Source of the DNA: Macrostomum lignano
Lineage: Eukaryota
DNA: 64,000 nt
Assembly (NCBI GenBank): GCA_002269645.1
Contig: NIVC01000056.1
Coordinates: 930,001-994,000 of the forward strand
Direction: 5' to 3'
Part shown: piece by piece, positions 2,457 through 25,087 of the stretch
Numbering within the stretch: the stretch's first letter is position 1
Layout: every line of letters starts with the position of its first letter
Translations under genes and position numbers: made by a program
The notes under the pieces: generated by a model
What the model was told of the DNA's origin: nothing
Seen by the model: only the letters and a program-made list of their open reading frames with translations
Database searches by the model: none

Positions 2457-3242
2457 TCAACGCGGTGTCATGATATGCCGGCCTCCGTCTACGGGAACGA
2501 TGGTGCCAGTGATGAAGCTCGCAGCATCCGAGGCTAGAAAGGCCACCACAGTGGCCACCTCCTCCGGTTGGCCGGCCCTGCCCAGAGCGTGCGTGGTCTT
2601 GGACCGCTCCAGGAAGGCGGCATAAGCTTCATCGGACATGCCCGATCGCTTGTGAATCTCCGTGACAATCACGCCAGGATTTACCGAGTTCACGCGAACA
2701 CCCTTAGACGCTAAGTCGAGCGCTGTACACCTGGTGAACTGGTCCAAAGAGGCTTTAGTCATGCAGTAGGTCATGACGTTTGGAAAAGCGCAATTACCAG
2801 CTACGGAGGACACGTTAACAACGCTGCCCCGACCGGAGGCGATCAGGTGCGGCACGGCGGCTTGAGTCAGCTCGATCGCTGTGTCAACATTCAATCGGCG
2901 AAGCCCTTCAGCAGCGCTAGGCGAATAAGTCTCGACGGTGTCGTTGATAAGAGCTCCAGCAGCGTTGACAAGAATGTGCAAGCGGCCGAACGCGTTGACG
3001 GCTGCTGGCACGACTTTGGCCAAATCAGCTGGTTGAAGCAGATCAGCGGAGAGAGTGGCTGCTGACCTGTCCGATCCGACCTGCTTGCAGGCGGCCAGAG
3101 TCTCGTCCAGAGCGGTCTGGCTGCGGCCGACCAGCAGGACTTGAGCGCCGAGGCGAACCAGCTGGACAGCCACTGCTCTACCGATGCCAGAACTGGCCCC
3201 GGTTACTGTGGCAACGCGATCGGTTAGGGATAGGGAGTCCAT
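2457..3242 (-). CDS. Classical short-chain dehydrogenase/reductase (FabG-like), intronless, 261 aa
   Basis: First ATG at 3242 (MDSLSLTDRVATV). Motifs: TGASSGIG Rossmann motif, LVNAAG, NVSS, catalytic YCMTK, VNSVNPG, and the C-terminal FITGTIVPVDGG. Confidence 0.93.
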   Translation of the reverse strand: MDSLSLTDRVATVTGASSGIGRAVAVQLVRLGAQVLLVGRSQTALDETLAACKQVGSDRSAATLSADLLQPADLAKVVPAAVNAFGRLHILVNAAGALINDTVETYSPSAAEGLRRLNVDTAIELTQAAVPHLIASGRGSVVNVSSVAGNCAFPNVMTYCMTKASLDQFTRCTALDLASKGVRVNSVNPGVIVTEIHKRSGMSDEAYAAFLERSKTTHALGRAGQPEEVATVVAFLASDAASFITGTIVPVDGGRHIMTPR

Positions 3243-3283
3243 GAATGAGGGAAGCGTATACTTGTACTTTTCAATGTGCGCTA

Positions 3284-3416
3284 GTTGCCATGGCAATACT
3301 GCTGAGGTGCCTATTCTAGAATCCCGAATTTGTAGACCAGAAACCAGCAGTCTAAAGACGATAAGGGGTCTAGAGATAACTCGGCCCGGATCAATCACGC
3401 TAGTTGCTATAGCAAC
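3284..3416. promoter_or_regulatory. Two RFX X-box-like palindromes upstream of the SDR gene
   Basis: GTTGCCATGGCAAT at 3284-3297 and the perfect palindrome GTTGCTATAGCAAC at 3403-3416. X-box consensus is GTHNYY-AT-RRNAAC. Confidence 0.5.
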
Positions 3417-3443
3417 AATACTAGGGAACCCCTTTTAGATTAC

Positions 3444-23100: not shown

Positions 23101-23345
23101 AGTGGTGATCCTACCAGGTAAAGTGGCGATCCTACCGGGTAAAGTGGTGATCCTACCAGGTAAAGTGGTGATCCTACCAGGTAAAGTGGTGATCCTACTA
23201 GGTAAAGTGGTGATCCTAGCAGGTAAAGTGGTGATCCTACCAGGTAAAGTGGTGATCCTACTAGGTAAAGTGGTGATCCTAGCAGGTAAAGTGGTGATCC
23301 TACTAGGTAAAGTGGTGATCCTACCAGGTAAAGTGGTGATTTCTC
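20130..23345. repeat. 21-bp minisatellite (GGTAAAGTGGTGATCCTACCA), ~150 copies, with a higher-order ~0.9-1 kb triplication
   Basis: The marker variant CTTTCAGATGAAG plus a 3-bp insertion recurs at ~20271, 21177 and 22167 (periods 906 and 990 bp). Confidence 0.97.
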
Positions 23346-23869
23346 AGGAAAAAAGGCCATTATTCAGGGTCAATTAATAGGATTTATTAACTTTCCTGGG
23401 TAAAGGGTCGAATCTTTAGGATGAAGGGGTGATTCTTCCTAAAGGAGTTAATAAGGGAATTTTTTAGGGGCAGGTCGTTTTTAGTAGGTGTCGACATCCA
23501 CATATACTAGTTAGCTAATTTAATTGTAAAAAGAGTCAATTGAAAAAATCTGGGTTAAATCAAATCATCATCGTGCAGAAGAAATGCAGTTAAACACCAT
23601 ATAGTACAAATGAGAACATGTACTTTTAAAATACAACATACATAAATACTGTATTACCTACGCGCATATTAAAACTTAATTAAGCCAGAATTTAAAAGTG
23701 TAGCAATCAGCATAGGAACAAAGATTGACTCTTATTATTACACCATTGTATCGTGTAGACGAATAACATTTCGTCACTATGGTAACAAAAGTACACACTT
23801 ACAATGGGATTAACACGGTTACTACTGTATAATAAAGCAACAAGTTCCAAGCAAACAGACGCGCAACAG

Positions 23870-25087
23870 TCAGGGCTCGCTAGTGCGAAATGTGTCGGAT
23901 AAGATGACGAAGGTGCCGTCGGACTGGCGTGACAGGACGAACGCTTGAGAAAATAATTTATGCCGGCGATCTTCGCAGCGTAGAAATTTTACCTGACCGT
24001 GGCAGGTAGCAAGCAGCGAGTTCGGCGGAAATATGTCGCCGTCAAGGAGTTGAGCGCTAACGCTGTAGGGCTGCGCTATGCAATTGGGTAGTTGAGCATA
24101 GAACTGCCCGATCTCCTGCGGGTAAGAATTCAGTGGGCAGGCCTAATCTAGCTCAGCCAATGGGAGAGCAGTAAGGAGAGAGGTTAAAGTCAGACGGACG
24201 CAACTCAGCCTTGGGGCAGACCTAATCTAACTCAGCCAATGAGAGAGCAGTAAGGAGAGAGGGCAAAGTCAGATCCAAGCGGACAAGAAGAAAGCCACTG
24301 TTTATCGGCTTGGCTGATGGGGGGGCTTTTCTCTTACACGTTATGCTCTCGCACTGGATTTGGCTCTTTGAAGTCTTCCTGTAATCTTCTAATTTTCTTT
24401 TCTTGAATAATTTCGAGCCTGAGACAGGGTGGAGTCTGTAAAACTGGATCAACGCGCTAATTTAATGGGGCAAAATGCTAATTTGTATAGTACAAAACAG
24501 ATAAATACTGCTACCCTTCAGGATAATGTCCTTGGAATATGTTAGCACACAACATAAAACATCGCCTTGAATCATTTATGACGCCAGAATCTTAAATCTT
24601 TTAAAATTGCAATCCTACGAAACTTTCACGACTTCATACTTTCAGACTGTACCTTCCTAAAACTGTACAAACCTTTGAAAGACGTTACAACCCTTCACAA
24701 GACTGCACAGACCTTCCCAAGACTGCAAAATCTTCCTAAGACTGCACAAACCTTCCCAAGACTGCACAACCCTTTACAAGACTGTACAAACGTTCCCAAC
24801 ACTTTACAAACCTTCACAAAACTGTACAACTCTTCACATGATCGTAAAAACCTTAAGACTACAACTTTTCAAAAAATCAAACAACAAAAAATAAAATGAA
24901 AATAAAATTATCAAACCTGTTTCCCTGAATGCCTGTGACCATTCCAAGCTAGCACAGCCTGATCGGCATATAGTGGAGTCAAATTCTGTCTAGTGTCGCT
25001 CATTCTTTTGTAGTACATTGTGCAGAAACGAACTGCAGCTGCGTCGCATCGAGCCTGATCTAAAGGCTTATTGTTGTCAGATGACAT
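23870..25087 (-). CDS. NXT1: NTF2-related export protein NXT1/p15, 2 exons, 138 aa (not in ORF track)
   Basis: Exon 1 (25087-24917): MSSDNNKPLDQARCDAAAVRFCTMYYKRMSDTRQNLTPLYADQAVLAWNGHRHSGKQ. Exon 2 (24115-23870): EIGQFYAQLP...TCHGQVKF..LFSQAFVLSRQSDGTFVILSDTFRTSEP*. GT-AG, phase 0, NXT1-like throughout. Confidence 0.88.
24640..24860. repeat. Degenerate ~21-bp repeat (AAGACTGCACAAACCTTCCC) in the NXT1 intron
   Basis: Imperfect tandem units. Confidence 0.75.

What the first reader, a model, noticed from the sequence alone, without database searches (positions are those of the whole stretch)
2457..25087. Eight co-directional conserved genes: candidate animal operon (NXT1-GLRX5-C5orf22-SCLY-RPF2-TIMM29-C9orf85-SDR)
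Seen: every recognisable gene in 2.4-25.1 kb is on the minus strand. Stop-to-start gaps are about 4.2, 1.2, 0.46, 1.0, 2.1, 2.0 and 0.7 kb, but most of each larger gap is inserted repeat (3.2-kb array, 788-bp MITE, AGAC tract, arrays and microsatellites, 350-bp SINE). The native spacers are therefore only ~0.35-1 kb. Known: flatworms resolve polycistronic transcripts by spliced-leader (SL) trans-splicing, typically at conserved housekeeping genes. Inference: this is a long operon of mRNA export, Fe-S/Se, ribosome and mitochondrial import genes, whose spacers tolerate multi-kb satellites.
Basis: partly seen in the sequence, partly recalled or inferred. Interest (0 to 1): 0.8.

Follow-up and report, generated by a model that had tools for sequence, protein, structure and literature searches.

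The report
Trans-spliced flatworm operon, already catalogued
This is a run of eight same-strand housekeeping genes in the flatworm Macrostomum lignano, at least five of which the public annotation already joins into shared precursor transcripts, so it is a real but already described kind of animal operon.

Summary
The window is Macrostomum lignano Mlig_3_7, NIVC01000056.1:930001-994000. Eight conserved genes lie on the minus strand between 2457 and 25158, in this order: NXT-like, GLRX5, C5orf22, SCLY, RPF2, TIMM29, C9orf85, SDR.

The operon reading is partly supported and is not new.
- Public gene names place C5orf22-SCLY-RPF2 in one transcriptional unit and RPF2-TIMM29-C9orf85 in another, in two paralogous copies of the locus. 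Five genes are therefore linked by assembled precursor RNAs.
- Seven of the eight 5' ends carry an assembly "footprint" of the spliced leader. The genome was polished with RNA-seq. At predicted YTNCAG acceptors the three copies differ in the last 1-5 bases at six junctions. Every change is toward the leader's ...GCATG end. The SDR junction reads TTCATG in all three copies.
- RPF2 is flagged TRANSSPLICED in a published table.
- NXT, GLRX5 and SDR have separate unit names wherever the name is visible, so membership of all eight is unproven.

M. lignano operons with repeat-inflated spacers, up to nine genes long, were published in 2021.

The parts
23870..25158 (-). NXT-like (NTF2-related export protein) gene. 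The inferred SL junction puts the first exon base at 25158. ATG at 25087; exon 1 to 24917; intron 24916-24116; exon 2 24115-23870. Product 138 aa.
   Evidence: Pfam NTF2. Single-intron model, an exact match to the deposited protein PAA92351. SL footprint ATTGCATG| in copies A and C versus TTTTATG| in copy B.
20133..23340 (.). A 21-bp satellite array of about 152 copies in the NXT>GLRX5 spacer.
   Evidence: TRF. The array sits at the same position in all three copies with lengths of 3.2, 3.4 and 1.2 kb.
19175..19663 (-). GLRX5 gene, single exon. SL junction TTTCAG| with the first exon base at 19663; genomic ATG at 19648. The SL ATG is in frame.
   Evidence: Pfam Glutaredoxin. The copy-B partial CDS starts exactly at the junction. 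Copy C reads TGCATG| at the junction.
18098..18887 (.). A 790-bp MITE-like element with perfect 16-nt terminal inverted repeats. It encloses a 21-bp array (18289-18728) in the GLRX5>C5orf22 spacer.
   Evidence: the repeat finder and TRF. The array is 440, 2069 and 3840 bp in copies A, B and C.
16780..18019 (-). C5orf22 (UPF0489) gene. SL junction TTTCAG| with the first exon base at 18019. There is no genomic ATG before the conserved domain, so the SL's terminal ATG must serve as the start codon. A 2-bp deletion near 17001 shifts the frame in this copy, so the annotated stop is at 16970.
   Evidence: Pfam. Junction and frame. The intact 413-aa copy-B protein aligns in two frames. Deletion.
14010..16328 (-). 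SCLY (selenocysteine lyase-like) gene. SL junction ATTCAG| with the first exon base at 16328. Exons 16324-15764, 15189-14770 and 14453-14010. Product 474 aa.
   Evidence: Pfam Aminotran_5. tblastn. Splice model 473/474 identical to copy B. Copy C reads ATTATG| at the junction.
13152..13394 (.). (AGAC)n tract in the SCLY>RPF2 spacer.
   Evidence: TRF.
9775..12991 (-). RPF2 (Brix) gene. Exons 12991-12557, 11700-11552 and 10135-9775. Product 314 aa. A 23-bp array (11896-12491) lies in intron 1.
   Evidence: Model, an exact match to PAA92347 / BOX15_Mlig013633g1. Its transcript cluster is flagged TRANSSPLICED.
7763..9650 (.). Arrays in the RPF2>TIMM29 spacer: a 28/166-bp array at 9108-9650, and GAA/AGT microsatellites at 8336-8579 and 7763-7984.
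   Evidence: TRF. The published RPF2 transcript length of 1704 nt implies a 3' UTR of about 0.7 kb that includes the first array.
7001..7639 (-). TIMM29 gene, single exon. SL junction with the first exon base at 7639. The assembly reads TTTATG| here and TTCATG| in copies B and C. The SL ATG is in frame.
   Evidence: Pfam Tim29. The deposited 'partial' protein starts at 7639, directly after the ATG. Junction comparison.
5213..6736 (.). A 14-bp array of 1.5 kb in the TIMM29>C9orf85 spacer.
   Evidence: TRF. Lengths are 1524, 933 and 541 bp in copies A, B and C.
3939..5048 (-). C9orf85 (DUF2039) gene. SL junction TTACAG| with the first exon base at 5048. ATG at 5046; exon 1 to 4792; intron 4791-4254; exon 2 4253-3939.
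   Evidence: Pfam. Model, an exact match to PAA92345 / BOX15_Mlig018840g1. Copies B and C read TTACTG| at the junction.
3439..3772 (.). A 334-bp interspersed, SINE-like repeat in the C9orf85>SDR spacer.
   Evidence: blastn finds further copies at window 48153-48486 and in RPF2 intron 2 of copy C. No tRNA or Rfam match.
2457..3239 (-). SDR (short-chain dehydrogenase) gene, single exon. SL junction with the first exon base at 3239. The assembly reads TTCATG| in all copies. The SL ATG is in frame.
   Evidence: Pfam adh_short. The deposited 'partial' 260-aa protein starts at 3239. Junction.

Best explanation
The locus is an SL-trans-spliced operon region of Macrostomum lignano.

**Proposed mechanism.** RNA polymerase II transcribes the minus strand through several genes. 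Each downstream cistron is released by 3'-end cleavage and polyadenylation of the gene ahead of it. It then receives the 35-nt spliced leader at a YTNCAG acceptor a few to about 70 nt upstream of its coding sequence. The leader ends in AUG. It supplies the start codon for C5orf22 and SDR. It is also in frame, and so available as a start, for GLRX5 and TIMM29.

**Shown.**
- Published annotation joins the five central genes (C5orf22, SCLY, RPF2, TIMM29, C9orf85) in common precursor transcripts.
- Spliced-leader footprints mark the junctions of seven genes.

**Inferred.**
- The three flanking genes (NXT, GLRX5, SDR) are also trans-spliced and meet the published distance criterion. They most likely belong to the same polycistronic unit, driven from upstream of NXT.
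- The tandem arrays and transposon-like inserts are neutral passengers of the intercistronic RNA or of the 3' UTRs. Their length varies several-fold between paralogous copies, while the unique spacer sequence keeps its length.
For: **Source.** The window is Mlig_3_7, GCA_002269645.1, NIVC01000056.1.

**Transcriptional-unit names.**
- Mlig033541 g1/g2/g3 are C5orf22, SCLY and RPF2 in copy B.
- Mlig015320 g1/g2/g3 are RPF2, TIMM29 and C9orf85 in copy C.
- Mlig005709 g1/g2 are C5orf22 and SCLY in copy C.
- Mlig018840 holds TIMM29 and C9orf85 of copy B, plus the window's own C9orf85.

**Conserved layout.** All eight genes lie in the same order and orientation in three assembly copies.

**SL footprints.**
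- The assembly was Pilon-polished with RNA-seq.
- At the six junctions tested (GLRX5, C5orf22, SCLY, TIMM29, C9orf85, SDR), 9 of 46 substitutions between copies fall in the 5 nt before the junction. These lie at five junctions; SDR does not vary. P is about 2e-6.
- All nine changes are toward the SL base at that position.
- NXT shows the same pattern.

**Annotated 5' ends.** In copy B the CDSs of C5orf22 and GLRX5, deposited as 5'-partial, start exactly at the junction, and that of SCLY one base after it.

**C5orf22 start codon.** C5orf22 has no genomic ATG, but it is in frame with the SL ATG.

**RPF2.** Its transcript cluster is flagged TRANSSPLICED.

**Spacers.** The non-tandem spacer remainders are short. 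They are length-conserved across copies in five spacers and differ by 84-400 nt in the other two. In copies A/B/C they are 957/957/955, 715/704/752, 451/451/452, 775/774/859, 1125/774/725, 428/428/421 and 699/699/712 nt, 3' UTRs included. This fits the published criterion of a repeat-adjusted distance under 1 kb.
Against: **Split unit names.**
- NXT carries its own transcriptional-unit prefix in all three copies.
- GLRX5 and SDR carry their own prefix in copy C, the only copy where their names are visible.
- In the window copy RPF2 is a unit of its own (Mlig013633g1).
- The authors say units split at repeats, so these splits are ambiguous rather than negative.

**Long spacers.** The unique spacers of 0.4-1 kb, 3' UTRs included, are longer than the ~100-bp mode reported for M. 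lignano operons.

**A possible internal promoter.** The NXT>GLRX5 unique spacer is unusually conserved between paralogs: 98.1% against 92-96% for the other spacers. That could reflect an internal promoter.

**Limits of the evidence.**
- No TSS, poly(A) or read-level data were available here.
- The footprint evidence is indirect.
- Trans-splicing alone does not prove an operon. Only about 40% of trans-spliced genes are assigned to operons.
Confidence: 0.55

Rival explanations
1. A core operon plus independent neighbours. Only C5orf22-SCLY-RPF2-TIMM29-C9orf85 is polycistronic. NXT, GLRX5 and SDR are monocistronic trans-spliced genes with their own promoters and outrons. They happen to lie on the same strand.
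For: - NXT, GLRX5 and SDR have separate transcriptional-unit prefixes wherever their names are visible.
- About 60% of trans-spliced M. lignano genes are not in operons.
- The NXT>GLRX5 spacer has about 0.96 kb of unique sequence, close to the 1-kb cut-off. It is the best conserved spacer between paralogs.
- The C9orf85>SDR split occurs without any tandem array.
Against: - The authors state that units break in repeat-rich operon spacers.
- The NXT>GLRX5 and GLRX5>C5orf22 spacers carry the largest arrays.
- The C9orf85>SDR spacer holds a multi-copy interspersed repeat.
- After repeat removal all three spacers are below 1 kb, 3' UTR included.
- SDR depends on the SL ATG and lies only about 365 unique nt after C9orf85.
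Confidence: 0.35
2. No operon at all. The eight genes are independently transcribed, and the multi-gene transcriptional units are assembly artefacts from read-through or overlapping UTRs. The co-orientation is chance.
For: - A run of eight co-oriented genes is expected many times by chance in a large gene set.
- The transcriptional units come from short-read assembly.
Against: - Independent assemblies in two different paralogous copies join overlapping sets of genes.
- Every gene is trans-spliced at an acceptor next to its start.
- The C5orf22>SCLY spacer is only 451 nt, 3' UTR included, in all three copies.
- Order and orientation are kept in all three copies.
Confidence: 0.07

Closest known systems
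Macrostomum lignano SL trans-spliced operons (Ustyantsev & Berezikov 2021, PMC8629364; transcriptional units of Wudarski et al. 2017, PMC5730564)
   Same: - Same organism and same single 35-nt SL ending in ATG.
- YTNCAG acceptors.
- Conserved housekeeping genes.
- Repeat-inflated spacers that shrink below 1 kb once repeats are subtracted.
- Multi-gene transcriptional units already present in the public annotation of this very locus.
   Different: - Published sizes are mostly two or three genes, with a maximum of nine in two operons. Eight genes would put this locus in the extreme tail.
- The unique spacers here (0.4-1 kb, UTRs included) are longer than the ~100-bp mode.
Caenorhabditis elegans operons (SL2-type; Blumenthal & Gleason 2003, as cited in PMC8629364)
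   Same: - Co-directional housekeeping genes of unrelated function.
- One upstream promoter.
- Downstream cistrons resolved by coupled 3'-end formation and SL trans-splicing.
- Sizes of two to eight genes.
   Different: - C. elegans uses a dedicated SL2 and intercistronic regions of about 100 nt. M. lignano has a single SL.
- Here the spacers hold kilobase arrays.
- The first gene, NXT, is also trans-spliced.
Polycistrons of parasitic flatworms (Schistosoma, Echinococcus; PMC12582326)
   Same: - SL ending in AUG.
- Only a minority of genes are trans-spliced.
- Operons are resolved by the same SL that serves monocistronic genes.
   Different: - Candidate operons there are defined by spacers of 300 bp or less and are mostly gene pairs.
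- None is conserved across all the flatworms examined.
SL-donated initiator AUG in flatworms (slORFfinder paper PMC9851317; Cheng et al. 2006 J Biol Chem, from my own knowledge)
   Same: C5orf22 and SDR lack a usable genomic ATG and are in frame with the SL's terminal AUG. GLRX5 and TIMM29 are also in frame.
   Different: Nothing new. This is the same mechanism seen in another species.

Membership tests
SL trans-splicing-resolved metazoan operon | Adjacent genes on one strand with no opposite-strand gene between them | tested here: met
   Eight genes lie on the minus strand. The visible protein accessions are spaced as one per gene, and no other called gene appears. The same order holds in three copies.
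SL trans-splicing-resolved metazoan operon | Downstream genes receive the spliced leader at a 3' splice acceptor just upstream of the coding sequence | tested here: met
   The evidence is indirect. SL footprints mark seven junctions. Annotated 5'-partial CDSs start at or within one base of the junctions. RPF2 is flagged TRANSSPLICED.
SL trans-splicing-resolved metazoan operon | A precursor transcript spans the genes | tested here: inconclusive
   Public transcriptional-unit names join C5orf22-SCLY-RPF2 and RPF2-TIMM29-C9orf85 in paralogous copies. There is no such link for NXT-GLRX5, GLRX5-C5orf22 or C9orf85-SDR. No reads were examined.
SL trans-splicing-resolved metazoan operon | A single promoter upstream of the first gene, with no internal promoters | not testable with these tools
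M. lignano operon as defined by Ustyantsev & Berezikov 2021 | Repeat-adjusted distance under 1 kb between adjacent co-directional genes, with the downstream gene trans-spliced | tested here: met
   Stop-to-junction unique sequence is 428-1125 nt in the window and 421-957 nt at the minimum across copies, 3' UTRs included. The true transcript-end-to-start distances must be shorter. The authors' own RepeatMasker mask was not available.
Ancient conserved gene cluster (microsynteny) | The same neighbours in distant animals | tested here: not met
   The neighbours of RPF2 in Ciona and Owenia are unrelated genes. C5orf22 and RPF2 lie on different contigs in Ciona and in Cimex. Other flatworms could not be reached.

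The most novel reading that the evidence does not exclude
All eight genes, or nine with the downstream ankyrin/Mab-21 gene, form one polycistronic unit of at least 22 kb. That would be among the longest operons in any flatworm. Kilobase-scale satellite arrays, whose length varies up to nine-fold between paralogous copies, would be transcribed inside the pre-mRNA without disrupting cistron processing.
Probability: 0.4. Interest if true: 0.4.

Novelty: already known. Interest (0 to 1): 0.25.

Why it matters
The finding is a good worked example rather than a discovery.

Two practical points follow.
- This locus is a convenient test case for how far a flatworm polycistronic unit extends across satellite arrays. 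Three paralogous copies carry arrays of very different length.
- The reference assembly carries spliced-leader bases written over genuine splice acceptors, because RNA-seq was used for polishing. These errors mark trans-splice sites, but they also corrupt acceptor motifs and create false genomic ATGs.

Tried and rejected
- **Homologue searches for flatworm synteny.** Searches with TIMM29 and C5orf22 returned almost only self hits. RPF2 returned no flatworm among the best 120 hits. Gene order in other flatworms could therefore not be compared. Only Ciona and Owenia contexts were checked, and both were negative.
- **Exact look-up of GLRX5.** The full ORF was not found because the deposited product is a 5'-partial protein.
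- **Annotated CDS starts.** I first took the window copy's annotated CDS starts as trans-splice sites. They are offset by a few codons. The copy-B starts coincide with the acceptors.
- **Supplementary tables.** The Grudniewska 2018 table held only the RPF2/C9orf85 cluster. No supplement is held for the 2021 operon paper.
- **Non-coding RNA scans.** Rfam and tRNA scans of the window found nothing. The 334-bp repeat therefore cannot be classed as a tRNA-derived SINE.
- **Whole-window SL suffix count.** TTGCATG is not enriched across the window (10 matches against 13.7 expected). The footprints show up only by position and by comparison of the copies.
- **Promoter scanner.** The sigma-70 promoter scanner was not used, because it does not apply to an animal genome.
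- **Raw comparison of the copies.** An unmasked blastn of the copies was swamped by tandem repeats. It was replaced by TRF-masked spacer comparisons.
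Full report
**Source and gene content.** A TIMM29 look-up places the window in Macrostomum lignano assembly Mlig_3_7 (GCA_002269645.1), record NIVC01000056.1, positions 930001-994000, in the orientation of the record.

Source names of the deposited proteins agree. Spliced models reproduce the deposited proteins exactly:
- NXT: 25087-24917 and 24115-23870.
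- RPF2: 12991-12557, 11700-11552 and 10135-9775.
- C9orf85: 5046-4792 and 4253-3939.

SCLY is intact in three exons and encodes 474 aa, although its deposited product in this copy is only 180 aa. No other gene is called in the interval.

The rest of the window carries plus-strand genes: a fucokinase-like gene from about 35.2 kb, and CAPZB from 52.8 kb. The cluster is therefore one arm of a divergent arrangement.

The locus exists three times in the assembly:
- copy A is the window;
- copy B is on a 72-kb contig and is about 99% identical to A;
- copy C is on a 1.46-Mb contig, with 98.1% identity in coding sequence and 94.5% in unique spacer sequence.

All eight genes keep their order and strand in all three copies. 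The tandem arrays sit at the same places in all copies, but their lengths differ greatly. One array is 440, 2069 and 3840 bp in A, B and C. The non-tandem remainder of five of the seven spacers keeps its length to within about 50 nt. The SCLY>RPF2 and RPF2>TIMM29 remainders differ more between copies.

**Evidence for spliced-leader trans-splicing.** The M. lignano leader is CGGTCTCTTACTGCGAAGACTCAATTTATTGCATG, and the enriched acceptor motif is [T/C]TNCAG. Such acceptors lie just upstream of GLRX5, C5orf22, SCLY and C9orf85 in the window.

In copy B the 5'-partial CDSs of GLRX5 and C5orf22 begin exactly at these acceptors, and that of SCLY one base after.

Comparing the three copies gave an unexpected but consistent result. 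Five of the six junctions compared differ in the last one to five bases, always toward the leader's 3' end. SDR does not vary:

| Gene | Acceptor form | Altered form |
|---|---|---|
| GLRX5 | TTTCAG (A, B) | TGCATG (C) |
| C5orf22 | TTTCAG (A, B) | TTTCTG (C) |
| SCLY | ATTCAG (A, B) | ATTATG (C) |
| C9orf85 | TTACAG (A) | TTACTG (B, C) |
| TIMM29 | none seen | TTTATG (A), TTCATG (B, C) |
| SDR | none seen | TTCATG (all copies) |

NXT shows ATTGCATG in copies A and C and TTTTATG in copy B, 71 nt upstream of its ATG.

The assembly methods explain this. Pilon polishing used RNA-seq reads, so leader-bearing reads overwrote the end of the outron.

Nine of the 46 substitutions within 100 nt of six junctions fall in the 5-nt zone before the junction (P about 2e-6). 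All nine match the leader base at that position.

The same mark is present at the plus-strand fucokinase-like gene. RPF2 has no footprint, but its transcript cluster is flagged TRANSSPLICED in Grudniewska et al. 2018.

I conclude that all eight genes are trans-spliced. For seven of them this is an inference from an assembly artefact, not from reads.

The leader's ATG is in frame for GLRX5, C5orf22, TIMM29 and SDR. C5orf22 has no genomic ATG ahead of its conserved domain.

**Evidence for polycistronic transcription.** In the Mlig_3_7 annotation, genes cut from one transcriptional unit share a name prefix. By that rule:
- C5orf22, SCLY and RPF2 share a unit in copy B (Mlig033541 g1-g3).
- RPF2, TIMM29 and C9orf85 share a unit in copy C (Mlig015320 g1-g3).
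- C5orf22 and SCLY share a unit in copy C (Mlig005709).
- TIMM29 and C9orf85 share a unit in copy B (Mlig018840). That prefix also covers the window's own C9orf85.

Five genes are thus linked by overlapping precursor transcripts.

NXT has its own prefix in all three copies. GLRX5 and SDR have their own prefix in copy C, the only copy where their names are visible. The authors state that such units tend to break in repeat-rich operon spacers. These breaks therefore do not exclude a longer unit, but they do not support one either.

**Comparison with what is known.** Ustyantsev & Berezikov 2021 reported the following:
- 30% of M. lignano genes are trans-spliced and 15% lie in operons.
- Repeats inflate operon spacers.
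- The repeat-adjusted distances peak near 100 bp.
- Their operon criterion is a repeat-adjusted distance under 1 kb.
- Operons reach nine genes.
- Trans-spliced genes are enriched for conserved genes.

By that criterion all seven spacers here qualify. Their unique sequence is 0.42-1.1 kb with 3' UTRs included. The published RPF2 transcript length of 1704 nt implies a 3' UTR of about 0.7 kb.

The cluster is not ancient synteny. RPF2 has unrelated neighbours in Ciona and Owenia.

**Verdict.** The feature is real and its mechanism is the known one. A five-gene operon core is documented in public annotation. The eight-gene extent is plausible, at roughly even odds, but untested. The novelty class is 'already known' and the interest is low to moderate.

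Noticed in passing
window 25159-25166, 19664-19669, 18020-18025, 16329-16334, 7640-7645, 5049-5054, 3240-3245 (minus strand); about 35170-35175 (plus strand); homologous sites in L004-L007: The last 1-5 bases before trans-splice junctions are replaced by the 3' end of the spliced leader (...GCATG) in one or more assembly copies. This is probably a by-product of Pilon polishing with RNA-seq. It marks trans-splice sites, destroys real CAG acceptors in the reference, and creates false genomic ATGs.
   Followed up: yes
window about 17001 (minus strand); copy C L007 about 18858: C5orf22 carries a 2-bp deletion (GAGTCTCTTC to GAGTCTTC) in the window copy and a 1-bp deletion at another site in copy C. 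Copy B encodes an intact 413-aa protein. This is either residual assembly error or decay of redundant copies in a hidden polyploid.
   Followed up: partly
window 14010-16324 (minus strand): SCLY is deposited as a 180-aa product that reads through into intron 1. The gene is in fact intact, with three exons and 474 aa, 473 of them identical to copy B.
   Followed up: yes
window about 18049-18054 and about 7671-7676 (minus strand); the same offsets in copies B and C: AATAAA lies about 30 nt upstream of the C5orf22 junction, and ATTAAA lies 32 nt upstream of the TIMM29 junction, in all three copies. These could be poly(A) signals of the upstream cistron placed right next to the acceptor. That would put the arrays inside 3' UTRs.
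   Followed up: partly
window 19664-20132 and 23341-23869: The unique part of the NXT>GLRX5 spacer is 98.1% identical between copies A and C. That is as conserved as coding sequence, whereas the other spacers are 92-96% identical. It could be a functional element such as an internal promoter or a long UTR, or the result of gene conversion.
   Followed up: no
L001 20024-20639 (beyond window position 1, minus strand); satellite at window 1-1295: A ninth co-directional gene (ankyrin repeats plus Mab-21_C, 954 aa) starts 4.84 kb downstream of SDR. A TTACAG acceptor lies 34 nt before its ATG. About 2.9 kb of the spacer is the 32-bp satellite, leaving about 1.9 kb of unique sequence.
   Followed up: partly
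window 25159-35175: About 10 kb without any called gene separates the NXT junction from the divergently transcribed, also trans-spliced, fucokinase-like gene. It holds 23-bp arrays (from 29381) and is colinear with copy C apart from large indels.
   Followed up: partly
window 41263-42387 (minus strand): A 374-aa ORF resembling a seven-transmembrane receptor lies on the minus strand, inside the span of the plus-strand fucokinase-like gene.
   Followed up: no
window 39098-40131: Overlapping ORFs on both strands include a cysteine/histidine motif of the kind found at the C-terminal end of non-LTR retrotransposon proteins. This is probably a retroelement fragment.
   Followed up: no
window 53021-55127 and 61421-62342: Further long tandem arrays give spurious ORFs of 300-680 aa in and beyond the CAPZB region.
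   Followed up: no
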